This document shows positions 2,864 through 47,180 of a stretch of DNA of 64,000 nt, piece after piece (position 1 is the stretch's first letter; the number at the start of each line of letters is the position of its first letter). The position numbers and the translations under genes were made by a program. Location: positions 124,001-188,000 of IMG/VR virus record IMGVR_UViG_3300017786_003484, one strand, 5' to 3'. The notes below the pieces were generated by a model. That model was given only the letters and a program-made list of their open reading frames with translations, had not been told where the DNA came from and ran no database searches.

Positions 2864-2939
<76 letters not shown>

Positions 2940-3212: not shown

Positions 3213-3865
3213 TGGAAATATTAAATAAAGACGGCATGCTAGATAAAAGAAATACAATGTACCCTTCTTATGCCGAAAAGATTACAAATGCATTTAAAAC
3301 TTCTGAGGCCTATAGTTCAACTTATGGATATGTACTAAACGGAGAAGTTGAATTACCAAATAAATGGATTGCAAGAGAGAAGGAATATTTTTCTTTTGCA
3401 AGTCATGAATCAACAGATTTTGAAGTAACAGGGACGGCAGTATTTTTTACTAGACTAGGACATATGCATCAAAACAACTTAGGAGGTCCTATTGAAGACA
3501 GTGGACGACTTTGTTATATAGATGGTTGTAGTGATAGTTTATTAATATATCCAAGTCGTGCAGGAGATCCAAGTGTTAACCTTTTAGCTTTCCCTGCAGG
3601 CATTAACCAAACATTTCATATTCACCCTAGTGTAAGATTAGGATTTGTTGCTGAAGGATCAGGTAATGCAGAAATGATAACAGGTGAAGTGTATCCGTTA
3701 GAAGCAGGAAGTATCTTTTGTATTGAAGAAAGAGAAAATCATAGATTTCAAACAATAAACGATACAATGAAAATTATTGCATACCATCCAGATGGAGATT
3801 GGGGACCAACTGATCAAAATCATACAATGTTAAATCGTACATATATACTCGACGGTGGCCAATAA
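3212..3865 (+). CDS. Cupin-domain protein
   Basis: YIDGCSDSLL...QTFHIHPSVRLG...HRFQT...IAYHPD. Confidence 0.75.
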   Translation: MEILNKDGMLDKRNTMYPSYAEKITNAFKTSEAYSSTYGYVLNGEVELPNKWIAREKEYFSFASHESTDFEVTGTAVFFTRLGHMHQNNLGGPIEDSGRLCYIDGCSDSLLIYPSRAGDPSVNLLAFPAGINQTFHIHPSVRLGFVAEGSGNAEMITGEVYPLEAGSIFCIEERENHRFQTINDTMKIIAYHPDGDWGPTDQNHTMLNRTYILDGGQ

Positions 3866-4569
3866 TGTTCACAACAGAACCAACACTACAATATCTAATT
3901 GTAGATGGTAGAACTAATATCATTCTAGTTGGAACAACAAATGCAGATGTAGCATCTGCATTGATGCTAAGAAGATCCTATTATAGATCAGAAGTAGACT
4001 ACATGAACAATTCAAATAAGAACAAAGGTCTTTTTGCTACTGGTTTAGATAGAGAGTTTGCTCAGATGCAAGTCACCTATAGAATGAATTATCATGTTAA
4101 GTGGGGCGGTACTCCAAACAAATCAGGTCGGCATGAAATAGAGACTGTTAGGGATTGGACTAATCTTAATAAACATGATGTTACAGAAACTAGACAAGAA
4201 GCAATGACAGCTGAAACATTCTATGCTAGTGCATGGCAGATTCTTATGCATTCTTTAAGATGGACACCTCCAGAAAATGACATGGTGATTAGATTTTATC
4301 CTGAACTGTTAGATGCAGTTAATAAATGTATCCCACTCCAAGATTATTATGTTGATGATATTATTGAATATGCTTCTATTACTGGAATAACACCTAAGCA
4401 AGCCTATAATGAAATTAACAACCAACTAATACCTATACGCAAACAACGTATTCGTGCGTATGCCCTCTGGCAAAAATATACCCAAAAGATGCTAATGGTA
4501 GACACTAAACAAGAATTTCAGAATATACTTTCAGAAATTAGAAACAACGTATTTTTAGGAACAGAGTAG
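3865..4569 (+). CDS. Hypothetical protein; candidate partner of the downstream PP-loop ATPase
   Basis: 234 aa; similar size and position to 12790 and 25314, but sequence similarity is weak. Confidence 0.65.
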   Translation: MFTTEPTLQYLIVDGRTNIILVGTTNADVASALMLRRSYYRSEVDYMNNSNKNKGLFATGLDREFAQMQVTYRMNYHVKWGGTPNKSGRHEIETVRDWTNLNKHDVTETRQEAMTAETFYASAWQILMHSLRWTPPENDMVIRFYPELLDAVNKCIPLQDYYVDDIIEYASITGITPKQAYNEINNQLIPIRKQRIRAYALWQKYTQKMLMVDTKQEFQNILSEIRNNVFLGTE

Positions 4570-4570
4570 A

Positions 4571-4888
4571 ATGTATAGACCATTACCAGACGGATTAACA
4601 ATAAGAGAATCAAATGTACAAGGATTAGGATTATTTGCAACCAAAGATTTTGATGCAGATGTAGTATTAGGAATTGTACATGTTATGAATAAAAACTTTC
4701 CTCATGGAAGTATTAGAACGGCATTAGGTGCTTTTTATAATCATTCAGATGACCCTAATTGCAAAAACCATGAAGGCTTCTGGCATCAGATTCCTGTCCG
4801 TTATTTAACTACAACTAAACCTATCAAAGCAGGTGATGAATTAACTGCAAAGTACACTTTATATAATAATTTTGAGGATGTAGCATAA
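4571..4888 (+). CDS. SET-domain protein (minimal lysine methyltransferase fold)
   Basis: GLGLFATKD, FYNHSDDPNC, IKAGDELTAKY. Confidence 0.85.
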   Translation: MYRPLPDGLTIRESNVQGLGLFATKDFDADVVLGIVHVMNKNFPHGSIRTALGAFYNHSDDPNCKNHEGFWHQIPVRYLTTTKPIKAGDELTAKYTLYNNFEDVA

Positions 4889-5979
4889 TGGGCGAATTGT
4901 TATTATCTACAGTTTCTAGTCAAGTACATACCGCAACAAACAAAACACAAGACCAACTGGATTTTTATTCCATTTATAAGGTTATTGCTCCAACAGTTAA
5001 TTTATGTGACAGAACTGGTCACGTTATAACTCCTTACAATTATAAAATTACATTACCATTACCAGATAATGGTAAAGTAGGAACATTTGAAGAAATTGCA
5101 ATCGCCAGGGCAAAAGAGTTATTAGAGTTAAGTAGGGCAACTAATAAGCCTTGTTTAGTTTTGTGGAGTGGAGGCATTGATAGTACAACAGTATTAACAG
5201 CATTAATTATAGCCGCTGATGGAGATTATAGTAATATTAAAGTTTGTATGAATGCTCAATCAATAAGAGAAAATCCTAAATTTTATTATAATTATGTTAG
5301 AGGTAAAATGGAAATTGCTCCTAGTGAAATAATGTTTGATTATATTAACAAAGATCATATTATTTGTAGCGGAGAGGGTTGTGATCAGTTATTTGGAACT
5401 GACATATATCTAGCAATTCAGGGCTGGGATAATAATGCAAGTATGTTCCAACCATATAGTTTTGAAAATGTTGGTGCATTTTTCGTACACAAAGGAATGT
5501 CTAACAGACAAGCAAGAATTTGGTTTGATATAATGGATAACCAAATTAAAGCAAAACAGCCTTGTGAAATTACAGATTTTAAAGATTTCTTTTGGTGGTA
5601 CAACTTCTGTTATAAATGGCAAAATGTATATTATAGACTTTTTAATATGGGAAAGAGAATGTCTATAACACTTGACCAAGATTTCTTTGATAACAACTAC
5701 CATAACTTTTTTATGAATGACGACTTTCAAAGATGGAGTATAAACAATCCTGATAAGAAAATTACAAAGGACTGGGCTTCTTATAAATTTACAGCCAAAG
5801 AGTTTATATATTCATTTGATAAGGATGAGGAATACTTTAATAATAAAGTTAAGATTCCAAGTCTGATAAACGTGTTTCGAACTATAGAGCATGTTGGCGG
5901 ACTAAATTCTGATTTTGAATTTTTACCTAAAAACTTTGATATTGAACCTTATATTAACAAAACAAACAGTTTTACTTAG
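4888..5979 (+). CDS. Asparagine-synthetase-like PP-loop ATPase lacking a glutaminase domain, paralog A
   Basis: WSGGIDST, SGEGCDQLFG, DFFWW, FQRWS, YK..AKEFIY. Confidence 0.8.
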   Translation: MGELLLSTVSSQVHTATNKTQDQLDFYSIYKVIAPTVNLCDRTGHVITPYNYKITLPLPDNGKVGTFEEIAIARAKELLELSRATNKPCLVLWSGGIDSTTVLTALIIAADGDYSNIKVCMNAQSIRENPKFYYNYVRGKMEIAPSEIMFDYINKDHIICSGEGCDQLFGTDIYLAIQGWDNNASMFQPYSFENVGAFFVHKGMSNRQARIWFDIMDNQIKAKQPCEITDFKDFFWWYNFCYKWQNVYYRLFNMGKRMSITLDQDFFDNNYHNFFMNDDFQRWSINNPDKKITKDWASYKFTAKEFIYSFDKDEEYFNNKVKIPSLINVFRTIEHVGGLNSDFEFLPKNFDIEPYINKTNSFT

Positions 5980-6961: not shown

Positions 6962-8272
6962 ATGCCGGCACCACTTATAGATCCAAACGGATCTTTACCA
7001 GAAAAGAATATAATTGTAAATCCTTATATTAATAAGAAGTTAGGATATTATATTGTAGACGGCTTTGAATTTGATTCAAAAATTAGAGCAGGGTTACATT
7101 CTGTTAAAGTAAATAAGCCAGTACAATGGATATTTAACAACAAAGAATTTAGATCGCACGACTGGAGTGTTGAACCTAGTGAAACTTTAGATCAGTTATA
7201 TGATGCAAGAGCTTTTGACCTAAGAGTAAAATATGATTATCTTATTTTAAGTTTTAGTGGAGGAAGCGATTCTTGGAATATTTATAAAGCATTTCAACGA
7301 CAAGGCTTACATATTGACGAGGTAATTGTTAATACAATGTCTAAGGCAAGTAAAGGATTAGTAACAGATACTAGTACTAAAGCATTTAATGCTCCTGAAA
7401 GCGAACATGTAAGAAACACAGTACCTAGGCTTAAAGAAATACAAAAAGAAATGCCTATGACAAAGATTACTGTTACTGATCAAAGTGACTATCTGTTTGA
7501 AAGCCTAGAGGCGGCCGGAGATGCTAGTTGGGTATTAGAGAAACGTGAGGGATTAAATCCTGCAGGTATTACTAGATTCAATTATTTGCATTTTATGGAA
7601 GTAAGAAAGAGATTTGATAAAGATAAAAAGATAGGGCTGATAGTTGGTATTGAAAAGCCTAGAACACTTGTTCACCAAGGACGTTTCTTTGTTAGATTTG
7701 CAGACAGAAGTACCAATATGATTACAGTAGCAGAACATTTAAAAGACTATCCTAATTCAACAGTTGAATTCTTTTACTGGTCTCCAGATTGTGTTCCTTT
7801 GCTTATTAAACAAGCTCATGTTGTTAAGAAATACCTTGAGGCTAATCCTTCTATGCAAGTTCATTTCAATAGTGAAAATTCTACAGGAAAAGTATATAGA
7901 TTATTGCACGAGCCTTTACTTAGAAACTTATTATACAGTACCTGGGATCAACGTTGGTTCCAAGCAGAGAAAGCAGTATTAGATTGGGATAGTGAATTTG
8001 ATCAATGGTTTAGAGTTGGTTATCAAGATACTAAAGCATATCAAGTTTGGATGGAAGGTCTAAAGTATGTAGCAGACAACTTAAAGCCCTTTCTACGTTA
8101 TGTAGAAGATCCTGATAATGATATATGGAATACTAGTGTAATGAATTCTTTTATTGATAGGGGTGATGAATTAGTTGGACAACGTCCGGATGGTTTGGCT
8201 CCGGTCCTTCATAACTACGAAGTTGGTAGAATGAAAGTAACCGGGCCAGGTGTTAATACGTTTATGCGTTAG
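6962..8272 (+). CDS. PP-loop ATPase family protein
   Basis: YDYLILSFSGGSDSWN, GIEKPR, EFFYWSPD; start moved to ATG 6962 after AAGGA. Confidence 0.7.
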   Translation: MPAPLIDPNGSLPEKNIIVNPYINKKLGYYIVDGFEFDSKIRAGLHSVKVNKPVQWIFNNKEFRSHDWSVEPSETLDQLYDARAFDLRVKYDYLILSFSGGSDSWNIYKAFQRQGLHIDEVIVNTMSKASKGLVTDTSTKAFNAPESEHVRNTVPRLKEIQKEMPMTKITVTDQSDYLFESLEAAGDASWVLEKREGLNPAGITRFNYLHFMEVRKRFDKDKKIGLIVGIEKPRTLVHQGRFFVRFADRSTNMITVAEHLKDYPNSTVEFFYWSPDCVPLLIKQAHVVKKYLEANPSMQVHFNSENSTGKVYRLLHEPLLRNLLYSTWDQRWFQAEKAVLDWDSEFDQWFRVGYQDTKAYQVWMEGLKYVADNLKPFLRYVEDPDNDIWNTSVMNSFIDRGDELVGQRPDGLAPVLHNYEVGRMKVTGPGVNTFMR

Positions 8273-9189
8273 TTCTTCTGTAATGGAATATTATTGTCTA
8301 TTAAAAATGCTTTTAATTTAACATTATTACGGAAAGCAAAAAGTTTTGTTTCTAAGTCTGTTCCTGCAATAGGAAACAATCCAATATTTTTAAGTCCTTG
8401 AACAAACTCTTTTCTCTTAAAAACATTGCTAATATCTTCTTTAATACTATCTAAGTTAGGCGACTTCCTTGATGCAATTAATCCAATAGGACTAACAAAC
8501 GGAAACTCTTCCTTGTACACATCTTGCCATGTAGGAATGTCTAATCCTAGATCTTGACTTGACATGATACTTGTAATATTAGCATTTAAATGATTTTTTA
8601 CAGTTGGATAATTTGCAAACATACAATCAATATTTCCTGCAAGTAGATCACTTAATGCAGTAGTTCCTCCTTTGGCATAAGGAATAACCTTACTTTCAAT
8701 TTTTAAGTTTTTAATAAGAACTTCAGTAGCAAGATGCTCACTACTACCATATCCTGCCGCTCCAAAAAGAATTTTGCCTTTGCTGAATTTTTCAAGGTCG
8801 CTAACAGTAAAAAACTTTCTGTCGTTGTTGCAGACTAGTACGTTTGGCATTGTAGCAACAACACCAACTAGTTCAAAGTCTTTAATAGGATCATATGGTA
8901 AATCGTTAAACCTAATTTCGTTAGTAACATAGATTTGTGCCATTGTTGCTGTAATAATAGCATTATTGGTTTTTAACATATGTTTGATTGCAATTTTGCC
9001 TGCGGCACCTGGCCTGTTTACAACATTATATTTGTTATCAGAATTAATAACATTTTTTTCAATTAGTCTTGTAGTCTGATCACTTGGGCCTCCGGGTCCG
9101 TGATGTACTGTAAATTCAATATCTGCGGCTGAGGCAGTCGAAACAGCAAATGCCATAATTGCGGCACTAGTTAAAATATTTTTAATCAT
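8269..9189 (-). CDS. Tripartite tricarboxylate transporter substrate-binding protein (TctC/Bug family)
   Basis: Signal peptide, PGGPSD, NRPGAAG, IPYAKGG..ALSDLLAG. Confidence 0.85.
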   Translation of the reverse strand: MIKNILTSAAIMAFAVSTASAADIEFTVHHGPGGPSDQTTRLIEKNVINSDNKYNVVNRPGAAGKIAIKHMLKTNNAIITATMAQIYVTNEIRFNDLPYDPIKDFELVGVVATMPNVLVCNNDRKFFTVSDLEKFSKGKILFGAAGYGSSEHLATEVLIKNLKIESKVIPYAKGGTTALSDLLAGNIDCMFANYPTVKNHLNANITSIMSSQDLGLDIPTWQDVYKEEFPFVSPIGLIASRKSPNLDSIKEDISNVFKRKEFVQGLKNIGLFPIAGTDLETKLFAFRNNVKLKAFLIDNNIPLQKN

Positions 9190-10207: not shown

Positions 10208-10855
10208 ATAGCCTTTTTTGTCTAAACGTTCTACAAGTTCTATCCATGAAATTTGTGGTTCAAGTTCAACAGTAATATTAACTCTATGTTCTTGTATATC
10301 ATCAAGATCTAACTTATGAGCCTTATCAACATGGTTCCAACAAGGTCCAGGATCTTGTTCAACATGTACTGGTTCGCCCCAGTCCCCATCTCCTGCCAAG
10401 TAACTGAAACCTCGTTCCATTCTTTGTGTTTTACTATTCCATTGCTCAAATTTTCTTTCTAGCATTTTAGGATCTTCTACGCCAGTTTTCCACCAACTTA
10501 TTTTAGCACCAACAATTCCTTGTATTGGTACGTTTAGCCTAGCAATCATAGGTATATCAAATTTATGTGCGTCACAATGTGGTTTTGCGGCATGAGCACC
10601 TTTATAACCAATAAACAAACAAAATCTTCTAAAGCCTAATTCTAATTCTTCTACATGATCTTTCATACGTTTACCAATAGGACTGTTATCAAATATAGCC
10701 TGATCTAAATTTGCTTTATCAAATTTTGCTCCGTACTTTTCATATAATTTATCTAGTGCTACCTGTGCATGTGGCATTAAGTCAGTTTTAGCCCATTCCA
10801 ACTCTTCTTTAGTTGGTTCTAAGTGTGGCATTGGTATATGATAATCTAAGTTCAT
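10199..10855 (-). CDS. Putative 2OG-Fe(II)/DSBH-fold oxygenase
   Basis: PHCD...RLNVP...AHKL...RVNITV. Confidence 0.6.
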   Translation of the reverse strand: MNLDYHIPMPHLEPTKEELEWAKTDLMPHAQVALDKLYEKYGAKFDKANLDQAIFDNSPIGKRMKDHVEELELGFRRFCLFIGYKGAHAAKPHCDAHKFDIPMIARLNVPIQGIVGAKISWWKTGVEDPKMLERKFEQWNSKTQRMERGFSYLAGDGDWGEPVHVEQDPGPCWNHVDKAHKLDLDDIQEHRVNITVELEPQISWIELVERLDKKGYLV

Positions 10856-11610
10856 TTAATATTGTTTCCATATTTTTCAATACTACGGTCTAATAGTTCT
10901 TCGTAACCTTTCCATTCCCAACTAAGACTAATACTACACAGAATTTTACTATAGAAACTACCATCTTCTTTTTGTAGTTTATGAGCTCCATGACACCATG
11001 TATCATTGTTGTAAACAAAGGCACTACTTTCTAAACCTCTTGTTTCAACATAACAAGCTCTTTCTGTATCAAATGGAATTCTTTCTGCTCCAATACCTTG
11101 TGATCCTTCGCCTAATGGCTGTAACCAAAATGTTGGTGTAGGATTTTCGTCTTGTATCATAATTCTGAGACTATTTGGATAAGGTAACTGCTCGTTTTTA
11201 TCTTTGTGTATTCCAATAGGTCGTTGGTTACTCCAAAATAATATTTGACTTATTCCGTTTGTTGGAATGTTTGTATGAAGGTAATCAATAAACTTAGGTA
11301 GTATATTTTTACCATCTATCATTGGTTTTGTCCAACGGTCATCTGCTCCTGGGCTATCAATAATATTAATGCCATTCCAATTTGGCATTGTATATTCATT
11401 TAGTTTTCCTGTCAGTTTATGCATACGTTCTGCTTCGTAAGGACTATCAGTATATCTTTCATCTGGTTTTAGTCTAACGATAGGAGCATTATGAGTATTC
11501 CACATTTCCTGAAATGCATCATCCATAACAACAGGAGGAATGTCTAAAACCACAAATGGAATTCCTTTATATTTCTCCGCAAAGTGTCTTGGATAGTTAC
11601 TGTTTCTCAT
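10852..11610 (-). CDS. Putative 2OG-Fe(II)/DSBH-fold oxygenase, paralog of 56061
   Basis: IHKD..PNSLRIMIQDENPTPTF...CHGA; probable start MRNSNY, 5 nt after TATAAATA. Confidence 0.6.
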   Translation of the reverse strand: MRNSNYPRHFAEKYKGIPFVVLDIPPVVMDDAFQEMWNTHNAPIVRLKPDERYTDSPYEAERMHKLTGKLNEYTMPNWNGINIIDSPGADDRWTKPMIDGKNILPKFIDYLHTNIPTNGISQILFWSNQRPIGIHKDKNEQLPYPNSLRIMIQDENPTPTFWLQPLGEGSQGIGAERIPFDTERACYVETRGLESSAFVYNNDTWCHGAHKLQKEDGSFYSKILCSISLSWEWKGYEELLDRSIEKYGNNIK

Positions 11611-11615
11611 ACTAC

Positions 11616-11623
11616 TATTTATA
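11616..11623 (-). promoter_or_regulatory. T4-late-type promoter motif TATAAATA
   Basis: TATAAATA-GTAGT-ATG on the minus strand. Confidence 0.55.
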
Positions 11624-11685
11624 TTTAGGTAATACAAGGGTTGCTCAAAACTATAATTATTAGTATAAAAACATTGGGGACTACA

Positions 11686-11880
11686 TTGGCAGAAAATAAA
11701 AAACCTAAAGCACAAAAAACAACAGAAGAAGAAATTGCAGAATTTCTAGCAAAAGGTGGAGTAATAAAAAAGATTCCAATGGGAGAAAAAGGATATACTG
11801 CCGTTAATGTTTGGGGCAGACGTGTTAAGAAGCCTGACACAAAAACACCTTCTAAGACTACTAAAACTAAGAAAAAGTAA
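11686..11880 (+). CDS. Small basic protein with a SutA-like RNA-polymerase-binding motif
   Basis: EEEIAEFLAKGGVIKKIP; TTG start after GGGGA. Confidence 0.55.
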   Translation: MAENKKPKAQKTTEEEIAEFLAKGGVIKKIPMGEKGYTAVNVWGRRVKKPDTKTPSKTTKTKKK

Positions 11881-12146: not shown

Positions 12147-12512
12147 ATGGCAGAATATTGGGGTTATCATACACTCTTTGACTGTTTACACGGCGATATT
12201 GATAAAGTACGTTCTGGAGAAAATATTAAAAACTTCATAGAAGAACTAGTTGATGCTATCGGAATGAAAGCATATGGCGATCCTATAATTGAACATTTTG
12301 CAACACATGATCCAGATGCGGCAGGACATAGTTTAGTTCAACTAATTGAAACAAGTTCTATAACAGGACATTTCGTTGATAAAAACGGAGACCTTTATAT
12401 AGATGTGTTTTCCTGTATGGAATATGATGTACAAGTAGCACAGTCTGTTGTACAAAAATATTTTTCTCCTGAAAGAATTAGAGTAAATTACTTAACTAGA
12501 CAGGCTAGTTAA
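12147..12512 (+). CDS. speD: Pyruvoyl-dependent AdoMetDC (SpeD/SpeH)-family decarboxylase
   Basis: WGYH..FD, G.SLVQLIETSSITGHF, YIDVFSC; substrate uncertain. Confidence 0.8.
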   Translation: MAEYWGYHTLFDCLHGDIDKVRSGENIKNFIEELVDAIGMKAYGDPIIEHFATHDPDAAGHSLVQLIETSSITGHFVDKNGDLYIDVFSCMEYDVQVAQSVVQKYFSPERIRVNYLTRQAS

Positions 12513-12513
12513 T

Positions 12514-12786
12514 ATGTCAAAGAAAAAATACCCCTTCTGGGCTAGAGCAAATCATCACTTAGATCATTCTAATATGGGATATTGGTATCACCTTTGGCAT
12601 TCGTTTTATAACGGAAGTAGACTTTTGGCATTTGTTCTAACCAGTTATATTCATGGTATTTTTCCTTGGTTGTTTAAGTTTCATGCCGCCCACGGAGTCA
12701 TTCGTATTAATGAGGAATTAAAAAGAATGCCTCATTTAAAAAAGGCAATGGACGAGATAGCAGAAGAGTATAAAAAGAAGGATTAA
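12514..12786 (+). CDS. DUF6356-like small protein, paralog of 46968
   Basis: HL....MGYWYHL...IHGIFPWLF. Confidence 0.6.
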   Translation: MSKKKYPFWARANHHLDHSNMGYWYHLWHSFYNGSRLLAFVLTSYIHGIFPWLFKFHAAHGVIRINEELKRMPHLKKAMDEIAEEYKKKD

Positions 12787-12789
12787 GTT

Positions 12790-13590
12790 TTGTCTTGGGG
12801 TAACCAAATTAAAGAGAAGGTCTCTTTCTTCCATATGAATGCATGGAAAAGAAGGCCTAATGCTAACATATTTTATAGTCCAGGAGTTGACAGATGTTTT
12901 GCAGTCGACACCTTTGATCCTTATACAGCATTTGATGTTGCTAAGATATTAAGCAGTAAAATGCCAGCCATTGCAGTAATTGTATTACATTTTGAAGATA
13001 GAACAGATGTTAATAATAGTAATGTTACAGATTTTACAATAACAGATAAACAAGTAATTGGTGGAGCCGCTGGGTTATTATTCAGTAGGCAGACTCCTGT
13101 ATTTAGAAAAATGCAAAAGCCAGTTTTAGAATTCTGTGAAAGTATGCCTTTAGATTATATGCCAGGCTCAAATGGATATAATACTTTTATGAAGTTCTCA
13201 GAATATACTAAATTTGTAATACGTTGTTGGCATGCAACAAAATTGTTTGATATGGTGCATAACTTTTTACCAATGGAAGAGTTTGCAAACGAATATCTTT
13301 CTGGAGAAGTACCAGACGATATGTGCTTACCAGCAGATAGTAGTAACACAACAACATCTGACTTAGGACCTAAAAATGAAATTCGTAGAATACTTTATAA
13401 TGCAGATTCTATAGACGAAGCAATGTCTAAGATTGCTGATATGTGGAGAAATAACAATACTCCACATTCCTTTCCTATGCGAAAGATGTTTTATGCAATA
13501 CTTAATCACCCTGACTATCCAGAACCAGAAGATTTAGGTAAGTCACAATCAGATACTGATTTAACACATTACTCAGGTTATCTATTATGA
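12790..13590 (+). CDS. Unknown protein; partner of PP-loop paralog B, paralog of 25314
   Basis: YSPGVDR...AKILSSK.P and RILY...IDEA.S.I..W shared with 25314; ATGA overlap with the next gene. Confidence 0.75.
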   Translation: MSWGNQIKEKVSFFHMNAWKRRPNANIFYSPGVDRCFAVDTFDPYTAFDVAKILSSKMPAIAVIVLHFEDRTDVNNSNVTDFTITDKQVIGGAAGLLFSRQTPVFRKMQKPVLEFCESMPLDYMPGSNGYNTFMKFSEYTKFVIRCWHATKLFDMVHNFLPMEEFANEYLSGEVPDDMCLPADSSNTTTSDLGPKNEIRRILYNADSIDEAMSKIADMWRNNNTPHSFPMRKMFYAILNHPDYPEPEDLGKSQSDTDLTHYSGYLL

Positions 13591-14888
13591 ACTTAGATAC
13601 AAAGTTATATTACACATCAGTTAATTGGGACGGCCAGGAAGGAAATAAGTTTTGGGAGAAAACTTACGACGAAGTAGGAGCAGGAGGCAAGTTTGTAATT
13701 GACTTTGCCAGAAGAATTAATCCAAATAGATTCTCTACAAGAGATAATTCAACATGGACTCTTCCTTGGCCTGACGAGATTTTACCCAAGTACAAACTAG
13801 TTCAATACGATCCTAACTATACAGGTTCTTTTGCTGAAGCGTCAGATAGTAAAGCAATGGAATATGCTAGACGTATTGATAAGAATAATGAGAAATTTGC
13901 TATCATGTATTCCGGAGGATTAGACTCAACAATCATTACAACGGCGTTAATTAAAAATTTAACAAAAGAACAACTTAAAAACGTTTCTATCTGTACTAGT
14001 GTTCAGGCAGTAGTTGAAAATCCAAATTACTGGAGAAAGTTTATCTTTGGTAAATTTAAAATTATTGATTCGATGGTAAACAAATATGATACTTTACTAG
14101 AACTAGGATATACTCCAGTAACAGCAGATGACGGAGATTGTATTCATGGAACAGTATTAGGTTTAAACTTTTATCATGCATGGGAACAAAAGATTGGCGA
14201 AAGGTTAACAGCAGATCAGAGGGCTCATGTAAGAAACAACTTGCATAAACTTAGTGATAAAGACACACATTTTAGTGTATTTGAAGATGCATTAGTTGAG
14301 TACTTTCAGTATAGCAATACACCATGGTGGCCTGTTCCTAAGAATTTAAATCCAGATCCAATGTTTGGTCGTAAACTATACGACAAGTATGCCTTAAATG
14401 CAAAAACAGCATCTTGTCCTGTTATTAGTTTGCAAGATTTCTTTTGGTGGTTAATTTTTAATGTTAAAATGATAAACTGTGGAGTTCGAGGTGCAATGTA
14501 TTATAACGATCGTTATGATATGAATATAGCAATAAACAAGATTGAGAATTGGTACTTATGGCCAGCATATCAACAGTGGTCAATGAATAACAATAATAAC
14601 GGACAAAAAATTGGATACGGTGCTGGTACATATAAGAAAGTCGCAAGGGACTATATTTTTGAGTTAGATCAAAATATATGGTATAGAGATTTTAAGTTGA
14701 AACTTGAAAGCATGGGACAGAATAGTGTTCGTCAAAAAGTTGATACAACTGTTTACCCAAAACCCATGCATAGGTTTGGTATTACAACTGACTACAAGAT
14801 GTTAGATGTATTAGATGTAAATGTACAAGATTATATTAAGCATCATTTGTCCAAATTTGAGATTACTTGGAGTGAGGAAACAAAATGA
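13587..14888 (+). CDS. Asparagine-synthetase-like PP-loop ATPase, paralog B
   Basis: YSGGLDST, TADDGDCIHGT, DFFWWLIFNVK, YQQWSM, YK..ARDYI. Confidence 0.8.
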   Translation: MNLDTKLYYTSVNWDGQEGNKFWEKTYDEVGAGGKFVIDFARRINPNRFSTRDNSTWTLPWPDEILPKYKLVQYDPNYTGSFAEASDSKAMEYARRIDKNNEKFAIMYSGGLDSTIITTALIKNLTKEQLKNVSICTSVQAVVENPNYWRKFIFGKFKIIDSMVNKYDTLLELGYTPVTADDGDCIHGTVLGLNFYHAWEQKIGERLTADQRAHVRNNLHKLSDKDTHFSVFEDALVEYFQYSNTPWWPVPKNLNPDPMFGRKLYDKYALNAKTASCPVISLQDFFWWLIFNVKMINCGVRGAMYYNDRYDMNIAINKIENWYLWPAYQQWSMNNNNNGQKIGYGAGTYKKVARDYIFELDQNIWYRDFKLKLESMGQNSVRQKVDTTVYPKPMHRFGITTDYKMLDVLDVNVQDYIKHHLSKFEITWSEETK

Positions 14889-15457
14889 GAATAAAAGGTA
14901 GAGTGAAACAAGATGCTAAAGGTATGGATGTTCAAATATGGCACACAGATACCATTGGGCAGGAACCACTTTTAACAGCATCTTATTATAGAGCAACATT
15001 ATTTTTACTAGAAAAAGGTTGGGGTATGACTCCTTATGAATTAGCATCAAGTTCACATAGAGCAATATTTTTAACAACTACAACAGAACCAGAAGAATTT
15101 TTAGGTGGAGTTATTTGGGAATATCATTCTTATAACAAACAGGCAATGATTGTTTTAATCTGGACAGAGGACAAGTGGAGAGGTAGACACTTATATACTT
15201 TACTACAACACGAACTTGAAAGAGAAAGTGTAATATGCGGAGGTACTAGTATTGCAAGTATGGCTCATGCTGATAACGAGCCAAGACTAAAAGCTGGAGC
15301 AAGAGAAGGCATGTTTCCTCAATTTCATAGGCTTTATAAAGATCTAACTCCAGATCTATTTGAGAGAAAAAAGCAAATATCCGAAGAAGCCGGAAAGCCC
15401 TGGAGAGAAATTAATCGAGACAGATATAAATTAGAATCTCGTATGACAACAAAATAG
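14885..15457 (+). CDS. GNAT-family acyltransferase
   Basis: IWTEDKWRGRHLY (acyl-CoA motif), HADN...K.G. Confidence 0.7.
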   Translation: MRIKGRVKQDAKGMDVQIWHTDTIGQEPLLTASYYRATLFLLEKGWGMTPYELASSSHRAIFLTTTTEPEEFLGGVIWEYHSYNKQAMIVLIWTEDKWRGRHLYTLLQHELERESVICGGTSIASMAHADNEPRLKAGAREGMFPQFHRLYKDLTPDLFERKKQISEEAGKPWREINRDRYKLESRMTTK

Positions 15458-15487
15458 GTTGACAGCAGTATTCTAATAGTGTATTAT
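15457..15487 (+). promoter_or_regulatory. Sigma70-type promoter for tRNA-Arg
   Basis: GG-TTGACA-17 nt-TATTAT. Confidence 0.7.
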
Positions 15488-15506
15488 AACGAACAATTTG
15501 GAATAA

Positions 15507-15583
15507 CTGCCCTTAGCTCAGCTGGATAGAGCAACTGCCTTCTAAGCAGTAGGTCGCAAGTTCGAATCTTGCAGGGCAGGCCA
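15507..15583 (+). tRNA. tRNA-Arg(UCU)
   Basis: CTGCCCT/AGGGCAG acceptor stem, ACTGC-CT-TCT-AA-GCAGT, T-loop, CCA. Confidence 0.97.
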
Positions 15584-15599
15584 AATGCAAGGATTAATA

Positions 15600-16259
15600 A
15601 TGTCTGAGAAAAGAATACTAACATTTGAAGAGACAGAGCGAGATCAAAAATTACACGTTGACTGGGTTTTAGAAAAAACAAATTTTAAAAGAAATGGCTT
15701 CTTTGTTGAAATGGGTGCAGTTGATGGCATCAGACTGAGTAATACATTAACATTAGAACGAGATTATAATTGGTCAGGAATCTTAGCAGAGCCTGATCCA
15801 AGACATCACGAAAGCCTAAAAAACAATAGACCTGGTAGTAGTATTGAGTTTGATTGTGTTTGGGCAAACTCTGGAAAAACAAAAACATTCTTTCAATCTA
15901 AAAAAATTACAGATCAACGCAGTACACTTTCAGATTTTGCAGAAGAAGGCGATGCAAAAGAAATTCGAAAAAAATGGCCTACATTTGATGTTAAAACTAT
16001 AAGCCTATTAGATATGCTTGATAAGCATAATGCACCAAAGTATATAGACTATCTTAGCCTTGACACTGAAGGTAGTGAATATCAAATTCTTAGAACTTTT
16101 GATTTTAGCAAATACAAGTTTGGATTGATTACAGTAGAGTGGAATCATCATAAAAGAAGAGGACAACGTATCTGCGATCTTCTAACATCTAATGGTTATT
16201 ACATACCTGAAGACTCGAAAGACATATTTGAATTTGACTATGCATTTGTTAATAAATAG
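15600..16259 (+). CDS. FkbM-family methyltransferase
   Basis: FFVEMGAVDG..SNT, GILAEP, IDYLSLDTEGSE. Confidence 0.9.
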   Translation: MSEKRILTFEETERDQKLHVDWVLEKTNFKRNGFFVEMGAVDGIRLSNTLTLERDYNWSGILAEPDPRHHESLKNNRPGSSIEFDCVWANSGKTKTFFQSKKITDQRSTLSDFAEEGDAKEIRKKWPTFDVKTISLLDMLDKHNAPKYIDYLSLDTEGSEYQILRTFDFSKYKFGLITVEWNHHKRRGQRICDLLTSNGYYIPEDSKDIFEFDYAFVNK

Positions 16260-19745: not shown

Positions 19746-19819
19746 GCGGGTATTGTGTAGTGGTAAGACCTTAGCCTTCCAAGCTAATGACAGGAGTTCG
19801 ATTCTCCTTACCCGCTCCA
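19746..19819 (+). tRNA. tRNA-Gly(UCC)
   Basis: GCGGGTA/TACCCGC acceptor stem, TTAGC-CT-TCC-AA-GCTAA, U73, CCA. Confidence 0.96.
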
Positions 19820-20469: not shown

Positions 20470-20982
20470 ATGGCTTATTTAAGTGCAAAAGATACCCAAG
20501 CAATTAGAAAAGAACTTAAAGTACAATTTCCAGAGTTTAGATTTAATGTTAGCAAAAGATCAGGTGGTGCCTGTATTGTAACTATAACAAGCGGTCCTAC
20601 TGATTTCTCAGATATTTACAGACAAGATGCATATGGAGATGACGGCTATTGTCAAGTTAATGTTTATCATATAAAAGGAGACAATTATAATAAGCATACA
20701 GAATTCTTAGCAGATGTTCTTAACGTGATTAAAACTGCTCCTGCAAAAGGAGAAGGTTTTCATAAAGGTAGAGGTTGGTTTGATGAGTCAGATAGTATGT
20801 CTGACTATTTCCATACTGCTTTTTATATTGATTTAAACATTGGACAATACTCAAAGCCTTATGTGCAAAGTGGTTGTGCAAAAAAAGCTCCTACTAAAGA
20901 AGTAAAAACTTTAGAACAATTAGTTGGTGCTGAAATGGCTTCAACCTTAAGAGAACTTGCAATGGTTAAGGAAAACGTATAA
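20470..20982 (+). CDS. Early phage protein, LPD29-like domain
   Basis: IRKELKVQFPEFRFNV...DESDSMSDYFH..FY. Confidence 0.6.
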   Translation: MAYLSAKDTQAIRKELKVQFPEFRFNVSKRSGGACIVTITSGPTDFSDIYRQDAYGDDGYCQVNVYHIKGDNYNKHTEFLADVLNVIKTAPAKGEGFHKGRGWFDESDSMSDYFHTAFYIDLNIGQYSKPYVQSGCAKKAPTKEVKTLEQLVGAEMASTLRELAMVKENV

Positions 20983-23343: not shown

Positions 23344-23395
23344 ACCTGCAACTTATTCGACAGTAAGTAATTTATTAAACAAAAGGAGGAACAAT

Positions 23396-24690: not shown

Positions 24691-25317
24691 ATGGCACTTG
24701 TACCTATGGTAGTAGAAAAGACCTCTGAAGGAGAAAGAGCATACGATATCTATAGTCGTTTGCTTAAAGAAAGAATTGTTATGGTTGAAGGAGTAGTAAA
24801 CGATAACATGGCTAATTTAATTGTTGCACAATTACTTTACCTTGAGGCAGAAAACGATAACGATATTACAATGTTTGTTAACAGTCCAGGCGGATCAGTT
24901 ACTGCTGGCTTAGCAATTTATGATACTATGCAATTTATTGGTTGTGATGTTGCAACTTATGCTATGGGCCAAGCATGTTCTATGGGATCAGTATTAGCAA
25001 TGGCAGGTGCAAATGGAAAGAGATATGTATTGCCTAGCTGTCGTACAATGATTCATAGAGTTAGTTCTGGAACACACGGAACAAGCGGAAGTGTTCATGT
25101 ACAAGAATTACAGTTTGAAGATGCTATTCGTAGTATGGAAGAATCTAAAAAACTTAACGAACGTTTAACTCAACTATATGTTACCCACAATACAAAAGGT
25201 AAGACATATGATCAGATGTTTGAAACTATGAAGTTTGATACTTTTCTTGACGCCGCCGCAACTGTTGAATTTGGACTTGCAGATAAAGTTATTGCAAACA
25301 GGGCTGATGTAAAATGA
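24691..25317 (+). CDS. clpP: ATP-dependent Clp protease proteolytic subunit
   Basis: [37 protein letters not shown]. Confidence 0.96.
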
Positions 25318-26048
25318 GTATAATGACTGAACAAGGTTTAAAGGAACTAGTCGCTAAACAAGATACTTTAGGTAGAGTTCCTTTTGATGGTAGTAGATTT
25401 TATTCAGCAGATGCAAACTACCTTATATATTCTGTTGGAGTAGACAGATTTATATTATCTGATAGACTTGATCTATGGACTACATTAGAAACTGCTAAGA
25501 TACTTTCTTCAAAGATTCCATTAACTTTAATTGCACTCACAAACTGTAGTAAAGATATTAACAACGAAAATTGTTTGTTTTATACAGTATCTGAGAAAAC
25601 TGGTTGGAAGATGTCTGAGAATGCATGTCCAGAATTAGGTGCAGTATCAGGCGAGGATGCAGTAGAAGAGGCTGGCATTGCTTTAGACTTTAAAGATCCT
25701 ATTAGTGCTAATTGGTTAGTTAACTTACAAAACTATGCATTCTTTTGCCAGAGGATATTACATGCAATTAGAATTGCTGATGCTGAAACCAATTCAGACG
25801 ATGCAGTATTTTTCAAAGAGTTACTAGATCACGGAATTGCGGCAGTATTACAATCAAGAGCTGATCATACAAGAACTCCGCAAGGAGCATTACTTTGGAC
25901 TAAAAGGGTACTATATACTTCAAAGAATATTGACGAAGCAATCAGTGGTATTAATAAGATATGGGATAGCAGGGTACTTAGAGATAAAGATATAAGAGAT
26001 AGATTTTTTGAGTATTCAGGATTACCTTTTAATCCTGGAGACAATTAA
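25314..26048 (+). CDS. Unknown protein; partner of PP-loop paralog C, paralog of 12790
   Basis: YSVGVDR...AKILSSKIP; RVLY...[11 protein letters not shown]. Confidence 0.75.
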
Positions 26049-26049
26049 T

Positions 26050-27474
26050 ATGTCTGAAAATTTTACCCATGATACTTTTAGTACTGAGCAATATTATTAT
26101 GATGAACAGGCAAGAAAACATCCTACAACGGTAGCAGTTAAGTCTAAACTACCAAAAGCAAAAGTAACATCTTCTGGCTTAAAAGTAGGAGATAGTTTAT
26201 TTCATCATGGTATAACATGGAATGTAAGAACAGAAGAAATATACACTCCAATATATAATGATTTGCCATTAGCAGGAAAATATCATGTTGACTTCGCAAA
26301 GCAGTTTACATATAATAGATTTTCTCCTAGGCACGGTCATTGGGCTCAACCTTATCCTGTAATTCCTTTACCAGAATTAGCTATGCCGTCTTTTGATCCT
26401 AATCACAATAAAACATGGACAGAATGTACAGATGAAAGAGCTCAATGGGTTAAGGCTTTATTAGAAAAAGAGTCCAATCGTAAAATTGCATTATACTATT
26501 CAGGTGGAATTGATAGTTTGGTTGTTCTTATTGCATTACTAAAAGCATTAGATACGAAAGAACTCCGTTCACGTTTAACTATTTGTTGCAGTATGGAAAG
26601 TGTAATTGAATATCCTGTTTTCTTTGAAAAAGAAGTGCTTGGAAAATTTAAGATTATAGATCTTAAAATGGGTACTGTTCGTTTTAATAATTTAATCAAT
26701 GAAGGATATACAGTTATTACAGCCGACTTAGGTGATGCTATGTTTGGAACTGAAGTGTCTACACAATTTTATTATACTTTTAGGAACCATGCTGAACGTT
26801 TAGGTTTTCAAGGAAGAAAAATGGTATCTGATTTACTTGAAGATATAGGTAAACCAGATGCACACTATTCTGTTTATAAAGATGTTTTAATTGCATATTT
26901 AGAAACTCCAAATGTTTATTCTATGCCAACTAAAAGTAGAGAGAATATATTAACACCAGGCTTTGGAGAATGGTATTATAATAAACTAGACAAATTAGCA
27001 CAGACATCTGATTATACGGTTCATAGTTTACATGATTTCTTTTGGCAGATTATTTTTAATGTTAAATGGATGCATTGCTCATGTCGTTGTTTTATGTTCT
27101 TTGGTGACCATACTAATAACAAACCATTGTTTCAACATAAACGGTATATAAACTGGTTTCAGTCTGATGATTATCAACGTTGGTCTATGGTTAATAACAA
27201 TACAGGACAAAAGATTAAAGGTGTAACTGCTTCTACATATAAGTGGGCGGCCAGAGAATACATATACGATTATACAAAAGATGAATGGGCATTATATTTT
27301 AAACTTAAGATTGCATCTTTTCAAAAGATTGCTCCTGTTCACAGTTATCCACATGCTATGGACATTATAGATAGATTTGCTTTAAACACAGATTATACTG
27401 TAGTTCGTCATAGCGATCCTGGAGTGATTGATTATATACATCATCACCTTTTTAACTACAATGACTTACTCTAA
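26050..27474 (+). CDS. Asparagine-synthetase-like PP-loop ATPase, paralog C
   Basis: YSGGIDSL, TADLGDAMFGT, DFFWQIIFNVK, YQRWSM, YK..AREYIY; GGAG SD. Confidence 0.8.
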   Translation: MSENFTHDTFSTEQYYYDEQARKHPTTVAVKSKLPKAKVTSSGLKVGDSLFHHGITWNVRTEEIYTPIYNDLPLAGKYHVDFAKQFTYNRFSPRHGHWAQPYPVIPLPELAMPSFDPNHNKTWTECTDERAQWVKALLEKESNRKIALYYSGGIDSLVVLIALLKALDTKELRSRLTICCSMESVIEYPVFFEKEVLGKFKIIDLKMGTVRFNNLINEGYTVITADLGDAMFGTEVSTQFYYTFRNHAERLGFQGRKMVSDLLEDIGKPDAHYSVYKDVLIAYLETPNVYSMPTKSRENILTPGFGEWYYNKLDKLAQTSDYTVHSLHDFFWQIIFNVKWMHCSCRCFMFFGDHTNNKPLFQHKRYINWFQSDDYQRWSMVNNNTGQKIKGVTASTYKWAAREYIYDYTKDEWALYFKLKIASFQKIAPVHSYPHAMDIIDRFALNTDYTVVRHSDPGVIDYIHHHLFNYNDLL

Positions 27475-46521: not shown

Positions 46522-46971
46522 ATGTATGAGTATAAAGCAAAATTAGTCAAAGTCGTAGACGGAGACACAGTAGATGTAGATATTGATTTAGGATTTGGAA
46601 TGTGGATGCTAGACGAAAGAGTTCGTATAATGGGCATTGATACTCCAGAATCTAGAACAAGAGATTTAGTAGAAAAGCAATTTGGATTGGCCGCTAAAGC
46701 AAGGCTTAAAGAGTTATTAGGTAAGACTTGTATTTTAAAAACTCAAGTAGGTAAAGGCGGAGAAGATATGAAAGGTAAGTTTGGAAGAATACTAGGAGAC
46801 TTTTTAGTAGAGGGACATGACATACCAGCTGGTGAAGTTCTGATTCAAGAAGGACATGCAGTACCATATGAAGGACAAGCTAAAGAAGACGTAGATGCTC
46901 TTCACTTAATTAACAGAGAACGATTAATAAAAGAGGGCAAAGTAGTCTTGAAAGAAAAGAAAAAGAAATGA
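46522..46971 (+). CDS. Thermonuclease (SNase-like)
   Basis: VVDGDT, RVRIMGIDTPE, GKFGRILG. Confidence 0.9.
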   Translation: MYEYKAKLVKVVDGDTVDVDIDLGFGMWMLDERVRIMGIDTPESRTRDLVEKQFGLAAKARLKELLGKTCILKTQVGKGGEDMKGKFGRILGDFLVEGHDIPAGEVLIQEGHAVPYEGQAKEDVDALHLINRERLIKEGKVVLKEKKKK

Positions 46972-47180
46972 TAAACAGAAAACATCCGTCCGATGTTGGA
47001 TTGACATATTGGTCACATCTAAAGTTTGCTTGGGGCGAATGTTTCCGTTTAATTTGTATAAGTCTTGTAATGTTTATACATGGTTTTATACCTTGGGTGT
47101 GGGACTGGAAATATTCAGACTATATAGATAGAGCAAAGAAAAGAATTGAGCCACAGGACGATTTTAGAAACAGGAAGTAA
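46968..47180 (+). CDS. DUF6356-like small protein
   Basis: HP..VG.TYW.HL.FA...IHGFIPW. Confidence 0.65.
   Translation: MINRKHPSDVGLTYWSHLKFAWGECFRLICISLVMFIHGFIPWVWDWKYSDYIDRAKKRIEPQDDFRNRK

What the first reader, a model, noticed from the sequence alone, without database searches (positions are those of the whole stretch)
12147..15457. Decarboxylase, amide ligase module and GNAT in one apparent operon: possible polyamine-conjugation pathway
Seen: speD-like, DUF6356-like, partner, PP-loop B and GNAT are separated by 1-3 nt or overlap. The decarboxylase has ETSS where canonical AdoMetDC has ESH. Known: some marine-phage SpeD homologues decarboxylate arginine or ornithine instead of SAM. Inference: the amine product (agmatine, putrescine or dcSAM) could be ligated by the ATPase to a protein, nucleotide or glycan and then acylated. 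No spermidine synthase is visible in the window.
Basis: inference. Interest (0 to 1): 0.6.

Follow-up and report, generated by a model that had tools for sequence, protein, structure and literature searches.

The report
Phage amide-ligase pair beside ornithine decarboxylase
A jumbo phage carries a widespread but uncharacterised two-protein, asparagine-synthetase-like amide ligase with an acetyltransferase; the decarboxylase beside it looks like a common, separate phage gene for making putrescine, and nothing shows that the two form one pathway.

Summary
The five ORFs exist as described, and the ETSS motif is real. The window lies in a 244-kb viral record (CheckV estimate: 74% complete).

- **Decarboxylase:** it is not a standard AdoMetDC. 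It keeps the Ser/His/Cys self-processing triad. It also carries the four residues (Gln, Thr, Phe, Tyr) that mark pyruvoyl ornithine decarboxylases (SpeDC). It scores far below the AdoMetDC equivalog cut-off. No speE or agmatinase was found in the record.
- **PP-loop protein:** it folds confidently. Its best structural matches are the synthetase domains of the asparagine synthetase B group (Z 10-13). It lacks a glutaminase domain.
- **Partner:** it has no recognisable fold. A partner-like gene sits directly upstream of 77 of 88 distinct family members in phage contigs. This genome has six family members, at least five with such a gene directly upstream or close by.
- **Fifth protein:** it is a GNAT.
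- **Linkage:** DUF6356, partner, PP-loop and GNAT stay together down to 44% identity. speD does not. More distant relatives carry a gamma-carbonic-anhydrase-like gene in its place. Of the 80 closest phage speD loci, only near-identical kin have the module adjacent.
- **Spacing:** tight spacing is the genome norm, so it is not evidence of an operon.

The real novelty is the ligase pair. The polyamine-conjugation pathway remains unsupported speculation.

The parts
12147..12512 (+). SpeD homologue, predicted pyruvoyl-dependent ornithine decarboxylase (SpeDC type). Proposed pyruvoyl precursor Ser70, with His75 and Cys90.
   Evidence: Pfam AdoMet_dc 5.9e-17; phrog_3125 1.4e-25. TIGR03330 scores 34.2 bits against a cut-off of 75.65. 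The motif LVQLIETSSITGHF...YIDVFSC matches the ODC domains shown in PMC10407285 Fig. S5. An AGGAG lies 9 nt before the ATG.
12514..12786 (+). DUF6356 small His-rich protein with one hydrophobic segment. Role unknown.
   Evidence: Pfam PF19883, 31.3 bits against a cut-off of 24.4. It sits upstream of the partner in 5 of 19 non-redundant closest pairs. Tyr23, His26, His47 and Pro51 are invariant.
12790..13590 (+). Partner B, a 266-aa protein of unknown fold that is always coupled to the PP-loop gene.
   Evidence: No Pfam, PHROG or NCBIfam hit. Only 19 clusters found among 5.8 billion proteins. AF2 model pLDDT 78.6 with no fold match: Z 4.7 or less, TM 0.33 or less. Complex prediction with the PP-loop protein: ipSAE 0.47 against a best control of 0.00, rated weak support.
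13587..14888 (+). PP-loop B, an asparagine-synthetase-B-type synthetase domain without a glutaminase domain. Predicted carboxylate-adenylating amide ligase.
   Evidence: SGGLDS at residues 109-114. AF2 pLDDT 90.7. The top 12 structural matches are all AsnB-group synthetase domains, Z 10.1-13.3; other PP-loop enzymes score 8.1 or less. The family has 669 representatives.
14885..15457 (+). GNAT acetyltransferase with a roughly 40-aa C-terminal extension.
   Evidence: A GNAT lies within five genes of 9 of 19 non-redundant closest pairs.
15459..15583 (+). Promoter-like site (11 of 12 matches) and tRNA-Arg(TCT). These probably mark the 3' boundary of the unit.
25314..27474 (+). Paralogous pair A: partner A (25314-26048) and PP-loop A (26008-27474). 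ClpP (24691-25317) lies directly upstream.
   Evidence: PP-loop A is 36% identical to B (E 4e-80); partner A is 25% identical to B (E 4e-12). ClpP.
3865..5979 (+). Pair C: a partner-like gene of another subtype (3865-4569), a SET-domain gene (4571-4888) and PP-loop C (4888-5979).
   Evidence: the cluster-14 partner profile scores E 1e-18.
8269..9189 (-). TctC-family solute-binding protein with a signal-peptide-like N-terminus. This kind of gene recurs next to the pairs in relatives.
   Evidence: Pfam TctC 3e-22. TctC or DctP genes lie near the pairs in L016, L017, L024, L026-29, L031-33, L035, L037, L038 and L041.
46968..47180 (+). Second DUF6356 copy, not next to any PP-loop pair.
   Evidence: Pfam 1.4e-13.

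Best explanation
Two separate things lie side by side.

(1) The speD-like gene encodes a self-processing, pyruvoyl-dependent decarboxylase of the SpeDC type. It most likely turns L-ornithine into putrescine. It is a common auxiliary gene of aquatic phages and probably raises polyamine supply during infection.

(2) The conserved unit is partner + PP-loop protein, here with DUF6356 upstream and a GNAT downstream. The PP-loop protein is an asparagine-synthetase-B-type synthetase domain. I infer that it activates a carboxylate as an acyl-adenylate (ATP to AMP + PPi) and passes it to an amine or ammonia, forming an amide. It has no glutaminase domain. I infer that the partner replaces that domain as the subunit that binds the substrate or delivers the nucleophile. 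The GNAT would acetylate an amino group of the same substrate or product.

Shown: the gene families, the fold, the synteny and the paralogue expansion. Inferred: the chemistry and the heterodimer. Unknown: the acid and the amine. Putrescine from the neighbouring gene as the nucleophile is possible in this lineage only, and is not supported.
For: Decarboxylase:
- Ser70, His75 and Cys90 are spaced 5 and 15 residues apart, as in T. maritima S63/H68/C83 (PMC10407285).
- Gln65, Thr69, Phe76 and Tyr84 match the ODC domains of the assayed fusion enzymes and the stated diagnostic residues.
- It fails the AdoMetDC equivalog cut-off.
- No speE or arginase/agmatinase was found in the record.
- 245 phage loci carry this type of gene.

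Ligase:
- pLDDT 90.7. AsnB-group synthetase domains fill ranks 1-12 at Z 10.1-13.3, then a drop to 8.1.
- The PP-loop residues are invariant in 50 aligned relatives.

Pair:
- 77 of 88 distinct PP-loop genes have a same-strand ORF of 150-300 aa immediately upstream, and 74 of these overlap it.
- The genome has six paralogues, five with partner-like genes directly upstream or close by.
- Complex score 0.47 against a best control of 0.00; the tool rates this weak support.

Synteny:
- DUF6356-partner-PP-loop-GNAT is kept at 44-73% partner identity.

speD is unlinked.
Against: - No enzyme activity or substrate is known for any member of the PP-loop/partner family. The chemistry is inferred from fold alone, at 8-13% identity to solved enzymes.
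- Pfam Asn_synthase scores below threshold (13.9 against 21).
- The complex prediction gives only weak support.
- Two enzymes assayed by the cited authors warn against reading substrate from clade membership: the Sinorhizobium phage phiN3 SpeD is a true AdoMetDC that clusters with the ODC clade (PMC9992855), and the pelagiphage HTVC201P homologue is an arginine decarboxylase placed in the SpeDC clade (PMC10407285).
- speD also lies within 1-5 kb of PP-loop genes in two unrelated arrangements (L035, L065). A loose functional link therefore cannot be excluded.
Confidence: 0.55

Rival explanations
1. The five genes are one operon. The decarboxylase makes putrescine (or agmatine). The partner/PP-loop ligase joins it by an amide bond to a carboxylate on a metabolite, protein, nucleotide or glycan. 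The GNAT acetylates the free amine.
For: - The five genes are co-directional and adjacent, with an AGGAG before speD and a promoter-like site only after the GNAT.
- The arrangement is kept in close relatives L003-5, L020, L034 and L100-102.
- The ligase lacks a glutaminase domain, so an amine other than glutamine-derived ammonia is plausible.
- speD lies near PP-loop genes in L035 and L065.
Against: - The speD slot is filled by a gamma-carbonic-anhydrase-like gene in relatives that keep the other four genes.
- 76 of the 80 closest speD loci have no PP-loop gene within 10 kb.
- Tight spacing is the norm in this genome.
- With six PP-loop genes per genome, chance proximity to any given gene is likely.
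- The GNAT is closer to N-alpha-acetyltransferases than to SSAT (E 0.7), and no SpeG appears at E up to 1.
Confidence: 0.15
2. Peptide or protein modification. The pair forms amide or isopeptide bonds on Asp/Glu side chains or C-termini of a phage or host peptide, as lasso-peptide cyclases do. The partner would recruit the substrate and the GNAT would acetylate an N-terminus.
For: - Lasso cyclases, which act on peptides, are known AsnB homologues (established knowledge; none appeared among the structural matches).
- The GNAT profile's best named hits are N-terminal acetyltransferases: NAA30 at 2e-6 and Ard1 at 5e-5.
- Neighbours of the paralogues are protein-acting enzymes: a SET-domain gene inside pair C, ClpP abutting pair A, peptidase S9, Asp/Asn beta-hydroxylases and four radical SAM paralogues.
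- A D-Ala-D-Ala carboxypeptidase lies next to the partner in L021/22 and L009.
Against: - No precursor-like hypervariable small ORF was found.
- DUF6356 is conserved along its whole length and is His-rich, which does not look like a precursor.
- The partner has no invariant Cys or catalytic-triad signature and no match to transglutaminase-like or PqqD-like folds.
- Carboxylate solute-binding proteins (TctC, DctP) are the most recurrent neighbours, which points to small molecules.
Confidence: 0.2
3. Cell-envelope or nucleic-acid modification. The pair amidates, or adds an amine to, a peptidoglycan stem-peptide or sugar-acid carboxylate, or a nucleobase carbonyl as TilS or GMP synthetase do.
For: - AsnB homologues that amidate peptidoglycan meso-diaminopimelate are known (established knowledge, not tested here).
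- Peptidase_S11 and beta-lactamase-family genes lie near pairs.
- FkbM methyltransferase genes lie beside the module in the window and in L026-28.
- A tRNA-Arg gene follows the module.
Against: - TilS, tRNA thiolases and QueC score well below the AsnB group (Z 4.5-6.9).
- No RNA-binding domain is present.
- No glycosyltransferase or Mur-ligase genes appear in the conserved neighbourhood.
Confidence: 0.1

Closest known systems
Pyruvoyl-dependent L-ornithine decarboxylase SpeDC (neofunctionalised class 1b AdoMetDC; Li et al., PNAS 2023 PMC9992855 and JBC 2023 PMC10407285)
   Same: - Size: 121 aa, against 117-122 aa for the assayed phage enzymes.
- AdoMet_dc fold family.
- Ser/His/Cys processing triad with the same spacing.
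- The Gln/Thr/Phe/Tyr diagnostic residues.
- No partner speE.
- Phage-encoded.
   Different: - Activity has not been measured.
- The best hit in isolated phages (34% identity) is the Sinorhizobium phage SpeD family. One member, phiN3, was shown to be a true AdoMetDC, but its motif reads QDSH, not ETSS.
- The HTVC103P pelagiphage copy compared here has ETSH but lacks the Gln, Phe and Tyr; its own activity has not been assayed.
Asparagine synthetase B group synthetase domains (AsnB/ASNS, beta-lactam synthetase, carbapenam synthetase, TsnB9)
   Same: - PP-loop SGGxDS.
- Whole-domain structural similarity, with 189-274 aligned residues at Z 10-13.
- Implied carboxylate adenylation followed by amide formation.
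   Different: - Only 8-13% identity.
- Below the Pfam threshold.
- No N-terminal Ntn glutaminase (or degenerate) domain.
- Instead it has a roughly 100-aa N-terminal extension and an obligatory separate partner of unknown fold.
- It is phage-specific and multi-copy.
Lasso-peptide B/C system (protease plus AsnB-like cyclase)
   Same: A two-gene unit in which an AsnB-like ATP-dependent amide-forming enzyme is preceded by a smaller partner. Some clusters also include an acetyltransferase.
   Different: - The partner lacks the Cys-His-Asp protease signature and shows no recognition-element fold.
- No precursor gene was identified.
- The cyclase N-terminal domain is absent.
GNAT N-acetyltransferases (Acetyltransf_1)
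   Same: Profile match to solved GNATs (E 5e-11). The R-G-x-G/A acetyl-CoA loop is conserved across the family alignment.
   Different: - The window copy reads RGRH in that loop and scores below the Pfam threshold by itself.
- It carries a 40-aa C-terminal extension.
- It shows no specific likeness to SpeG or SSAT polyamine acetyltransferases.

Membership tests
S-adenosylmethionine decarboxylase, class 1b (SpeD/SpeH; TIGR03330 equivalog) | AdoMet_dc fold family (Pfam PF02675) | tested here: met
   62.4 bits against a cut-off of 25.
S-adenosylmethionine decarboxylase, class 1b (SpeD/SpeH; TIGR03330 equivalog) | Self-processing Ser with catalytic His and Cys (T. maritima S63/H68/C83) | tested here: met
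   Ser70, His75 and Cys90 are invariant in alignments A4, A5 and A7, with spacing 5 and 15 as in the reference (PMC10407285).
S-adenosylmethionine decarboxylase, class 1b (SpeD/SpeH; TIGR03330 equivalog) | Score above the curated equivalog cut-off | tested here: not met
   34.2 bits against a cut-off of 75.65.
S-adenosylmethionine decarboxylase, class 1b (SpeD/SpeH; TIGR03330 equivalog) | ESH cleavage motif and the conserved Pro after the catalytic His (H-x-W-P-E) | tested here: not met
   The window reads ETSS...GHFVDK, with no Pro. The paper states that this Pro is fully conserved in true AdoMetDCs.
S-adenosylmethionine decarboxylase, class 1b (SpeD/SpeH; TIGR03330 equivalog) | Spermidine synthase (speE) available in the same genome | tested here: not met
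   No PF01564 match in the 244-kb record, which is about 74% complete. The host genome is unknown.
SpeDC pyruvoyl ornithine decarboxylase | Four diagnostic residues (Gln, Thr, Phe, Tyr) in the central region | tested here: met
   Gln65, Thr69, Phe76 and Tyr84 are invariant in A7. They align with LVQLIETSLVSGHF...YIDIFSC of the assayed ODC domains. The positions were deduced from the text and Fig. S5, because the logo figure itself is not held.
SpeDC pyruvoyl ornithine decarboxylase | Decarboxylates L-ornithine and not SAM | not testable with these tools
   Needs an enzyme assay.
Asparagine synthetase B group (Pfam Asn_synthase PF00733) | PP-loop ATP pyrophosphatase motif SGGxDS | tested here: met
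   S109, G110, G111, D113 and S114 are invariant in 50 sequences.
Asparagine synthetase B group (Pfam Asn_synthase PF00733) | Synthetase-domain fold | tested here: met
   Z 10.1-13.3 for TsnB9, beta-lactam synthetase, ASNS, AsnB and CarA. The next class scores 8.1 or less.
Asparagine synthetase B group (Pfam Asn_synthase PF00733) | Sequence score above the Pfam gathering threshold | tested here: not met
   13.9 bits against 21. Only 3 of 50 relatives hit at E below 0.01.
Asparagine synthetase B group (Pfam Asn_synthase PF00733) | N-terminal Ntn glutaminase (or degenerate) domain | tested here: not met
   The structural alignments start at about residue 34-70 of the model and at chain residues 135-208 of the targets. 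Neither the PP-loop protein nor the partner matches an Ntn fold.
Lasso-peptide B/C maturation system | B protein with a transglutaminase-like Cys-His-Asp protease and/or a PqqD-like recognition element | tested here: not met
   The partner family has no invariant Cys or His and no fold match.
Lasso-peptide B/C maturation system | Adjacent precursor peptide gene | tested here: inconclusive
   The only small conserved upstream ORF is DUF6356. It is conserved along its whole length and is absent from most pairs. No systematic small-ORF search was done.
GNAT (Pfam Acetyltransf_1 PF00583) | Family profile match and acetyl-CoA-binding loop | tested here: met
   The L006 orthologue scores 22.5 against 20.7. 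Profile A6 against PDB GNATs gives 5e-11. The R99-G100 loop is conserved. The window copy alone is below threshold.
Polyamine N-acetyltransferases (SpeG/SSAT) | Specific sequence similarity to SpeG or SSAT | tested here: not met
   SSAT appears only at E about 0.7, and no SpeG chain is listed at E up to 1.
DUF6356 (PF19883) | Score above the gathering threshold | tested here: met
   31.3 against 24.4. The second copy scores 51.2 bits.

The most novel reading that the evidence does not exclude
The partner/PP-loop pairs would be a new, phage-specific class of two-subunit amide synthetases. They are multiplied to five or six pairs per jumbo-phage genome and often arranged in tandem. Together they would build or decorate an unknown amide-linked metabolite or envelope/protein modification during infection. 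In this lineage, one pair would use putrescine from the adjacent SpeDC-type decarboxylase as its nucleophile, giving an N-acetylated putrescine conjugate.
Probability: 0.12. Interest if true: 0.75.

Novelty: new variant of a known kind. Interest (0 to 1): 0.45.

Why it matters
The PP-loop/partner pair has 669 representative clusters and no Pfam, PHROG or NCBIfam model. It is present in many large aquatic phages, often in several copies, and no function is known for it. Working out its substrate would reveal what amide-forming chemistry these phages bring into their hosts. The decarboxylase adds one more likely member to the recently described phage pyruvoyl ornithine decarboxylases. The case is also a caution: tight gene spacing in a phage genome is not evidence of a shared pathway.

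Tried and rejected
- **DNA and protein searches against isolated phages.** Nothing was found for the module. Only SpeD hits came back.
- **Partner fold.** Atlas features, Foldseek PDB, the VIA wide search and Atlas shape search gave no credible match.
- **Partner subtypes.** Profile-profile tests gave only a partial link: clusters 1 and 2 share a 62-residue N-terminal block (81% probability), and clusters 6 and 14 match at 55%. Common ancestry of all partner subtypes is therefore not shown.
- **Complex prediction.** ipSAE was 0.47 against a best control of 0.00, with at least 65% contact agreement between runs and partner pLDDT of at least 71. That mark was reached by 58 of 80 solved complexes and 2 of 110 mismatched pairs. 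At scores of 0.60 or under it was reached by only 7 of those 80 solved complexes and by both of the mismatches that passed, so the tool rates it weak support.
- **Bacterial context of DUF6356.** This could not be obtained. The single paper naming DUF6356 says nothing about its function.
- **Literature search for the phage PP-loop family.** Nothing relevant was found.
- **DUF6356 as a RiPP precursor.** Rejected because it is conserved along its whole length.
- **TilS, QueC or thiolase-type nucleic-acid enzymes.** Rejected as the closest kind because their structural scores are lower.
- **Not used.** The read-mapping tools were not used.


Full report
**What is there.** The window is bases 124,001-188,000 of a 244,432-bp IMG/VR viral record that CheckV rates about 74% complete. 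GC content is about 0.35, and 246 of 312 called ORFs are on the + strand. This is a jumbo phage.

An AGGAG precedes the first ATG. The best promoter-like site in the region (11 of 12 matches) lies just after the last stop codon, ahead of a tRNA-Arg(TCT) gene.

Tight spacing carries little weight here. In this genome 52% of same-strand junctions have gaps of 3 nt or less, and runs of four or more such junctions occur 11 times.

**The decarboxylase.**
- It belongs to the AdoMet_dc fold family (Pfam 5.9e-17; phrog_3125).
- It scores 34.2 bits against a cut-off of 75.65 for the curated AdoMetDC equivalog TIGR03330.
- Ser70, His75 and Cys90 have the same spacing as the T. maritima residues S63, H68 and C83 that are needed for self-processing and catalysis.
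- The central region reads LVQLIETSSITGHFVDKNGDLYIDVFSC.
- Li et al. (PMC10407285) state that Gln, Thr, Phe and Tyr in this region identify the ornithine-decarboxylating SpeDC group, and that a Pro after the catalytic His is fully conserved in true AdoMetDCs.
- Their Fig. S5 shows the assayed ODC domains as ...LVQLIETSLVSGHF...YIDIFSC, and the AdoMetDC domains as ...VIAESHFSVHSWPE...DVFTCGE.
- The window protein has all four ODC residues and lacks the Pro.
- Its best match among isolated phages is the Sinorhizobium phage SpeD family (34% identity). The phiN3 member restores spermidine synthesis and clusters with the ODC clade (PMC9992855), but its motif reads QDSH.
- The pelagiphage HTVC103P copy reads ETSHITLHSW, without the Gln, Phe and Tyr.
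- No spermidine synthase or arginase/agmatinase gene was found in the record.

I therefore predict a pyruvoyl ornithine decarboxylase that makes putrescine. Activity on arginine is not excluded.

**The PP-loop protein and its partner.**
- The 433-aa protein has SGGLDS at residues 109-114 but no significant Pfam, PHROG or NCBIfam match.
- An exhaustive profile search found 669 representative clusters at E up to 0.001, none of them named.
- With 50 relatives, AlphaFold gave a model with pLDDT 90.7.
- Structure comparison puts TsnB9, beta-lactam synthetase, human and E. coli asparagine synthetase and carbapenam synthetase at ranks 1-12 (Z 10.1-13.3, 189-274 aligned residues). All other PP-loop enzymes score Z 8.1 or less.
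- The alignments cover only the synthetase domains of those enzymes, so there is no glutaminase domain.
- All these enzymes adenylate a carboxylate and form an amide. I infer the same chemistry here.
- The 266-aa partner has only 19 related clusters among 5.8 billion proteins. Its model (pLDDT 78.6) matches no fold in the PDB or the ESM Atlas.

**The pair is the conserved unit.**
- The window holds a second pair at 25314-27474 and a third PP-loop gene at 4888-5979.
- The whole record holds six PP-loop genes. Five have a partner-like gene directly upstream or close by.
- In 89 phage or metagenome loci, 77 of 88 distinct PP-loop genes have a same-strand ORF of 150-300 aa immediately upstream, and 74 of these overlap it. 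Pairs often sit in tandem arrays of two to four.
- The upstream ORFs fall into four sequence clusters that are only partly linkable by profile comparison.
- A complex prediction for partner B with PP-loop B scored 0.47 against 0.00 for the best control. The tool rates this weak support.

**The other two genes.**
- The 190-aa protein is a GNAT. Orthologues pass or approach the Acetyltransf_1 threshold. The family profile hits solved GNATs at 5e-11, followed by N-terminal acetyltransferases. SSAT appears only at E about 0.7 and SpeG not at all.
- DUF6356 passes its Pfam threshold. It is a small His-rich protein with one hydrophobic segment. A second copy elsewhere in the window is not next to a pair.

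**Is speD part of the unit?**
- Metagenome contigs whose partner is 73-84% identical keep speD-DUF6356-partner-PP-loop-GNAT.
- Contigs at 44-53% identity keep DUF6356-partner-PP-loop-GNAT, but the slot of speD holds a hexapeptide-repeat protein of the gamma-carbonic-anhydrase/PaaY/CaiE kind.
- Among 19 non-redundant pairs of the closest subtype, the neighbours within five genes are: GNAT in 9, a 100-aa unknown protein in 7, TctC in 6, DctP in 6, DUF6356 in 5 and speD in 2.
- In the other direction, IMG/VR holds 245 loci with this type of speD. Of the 80 closest, only three near-identical relatives have the module adjacent. One more has a PP-loop gene 5.4 kb away on the other strand.
- speD also lies three genes from a PP-loop gene in L035 and about 5 kb from one in L065. 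With up to six pairs per genome, that is not clearly more than chance.

**What the module acts on.** This is not known, but three sets of neighbours give hints.
- Secreted-type carboxylate-binding proteins (TctC, DctP), cupins and FkbM methyltransferases recur nearby, which fits a small-molecule acid.
- A SET-domain gene lies inside pair C, and ClpP abuts pair A. Asp/Asn hydroxylases and a D-Ala-D-Ala carboxypeptidase lie nearby in relatives. The GNAT resembles N-alpha-acetyltransferases. All of this fits a peptide, protein or cell-wall substrate.
- Neither reading is established.

**Verdict.** The part worth following is the uncharacterised, widespread and multi-copy phage ligase pair.

Noticed in passing
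window 35093-41932: Four consecutive paralogous ORFs of 393-514 aa (23-36% identical to each other). The first has a weak radical SAM match. A B12-binding radical SAM gene lies at 60021-61595.
   Followed up: partly
window 24691-25317: A ClpP protease gene (Pfam 5e-59) ends 4 nt inside the start of partner A. Upstream lie a Vut_1 transporter-like gene, a beta-lactamase-family gene, a peptidase S9 gene and an LPD29 gene (20470-24001).
   Followed up: partly
window 4571-4888: A 105-aa SET-domain gene sits between a partner-like gene (3865-4569) and PP-loop C (4888-5979).
   Followed up: no
window 8269-9189 (-); L016, L017, L024, L026-L041: Phage-encoded TctC- and DctP-family solute-binding proteins recur beside the PP-loop pairs. 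The window copy has a signal-peptide-like N-terminus.
   Followed up: partly
L006:5043-5522, L009:5194-5718, L040:4220-4744: In relatives, the position of speD is taken by a gamma-carbonic-anhydrase/PaaY/CaiE-like hexapeptide-repeat protein. L006 also has a pyruvoyl aspartate decarboxylase (PanD) gene about 5 kb upstream, and two DUF6356 genes in tandem.
   Followed up: partly
window 17484-19019: A 511-aa protein with an Ala/Glu/Gly-rich repetitive N-terminal half and an Ala/Gln/Lys-rich coiled-coil-like middle. It is conserved downstream of the lipase gene in relatives (L003).
   Followed up: no
window 2864-2939, 15507-15583, 19746-19819: Three tRNA genes: Thr-TGT, Arg-TCT and Gly-TCC. Compared with the otherwise collinear relative L003, the tRNA-Arg gene and the following FkbM methyltransferase gene (15585-16259) appear to be insertions.
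   Followed up: partly
window 10852-11715 (-) and 56061-57041 (+): Paralogous ORFs of unknown function (27% identity, E 2e-15). Homologues recur near the pairs in relatives (cluster 13).
   Followed up: no
window 749-1471, 49832-50590, 3212-3865, 44166-45647: Two Asp/Asn beta-hydroxylase-like genes, a cupin with a weak ectoine-synthase-like match, and a carbamoyltransferase gene. The window as a whole is an island of modification enzymes.
   Followed up: no
L048, L052, L062, L067, L085, L096: Tandem arrays of two to four partner/PP-loop pairs in other phage contigs. Some are next to ferritin, DesA-type desaturase, DsbA-like and family B DNA polymerase genes.
   Followed up: partly
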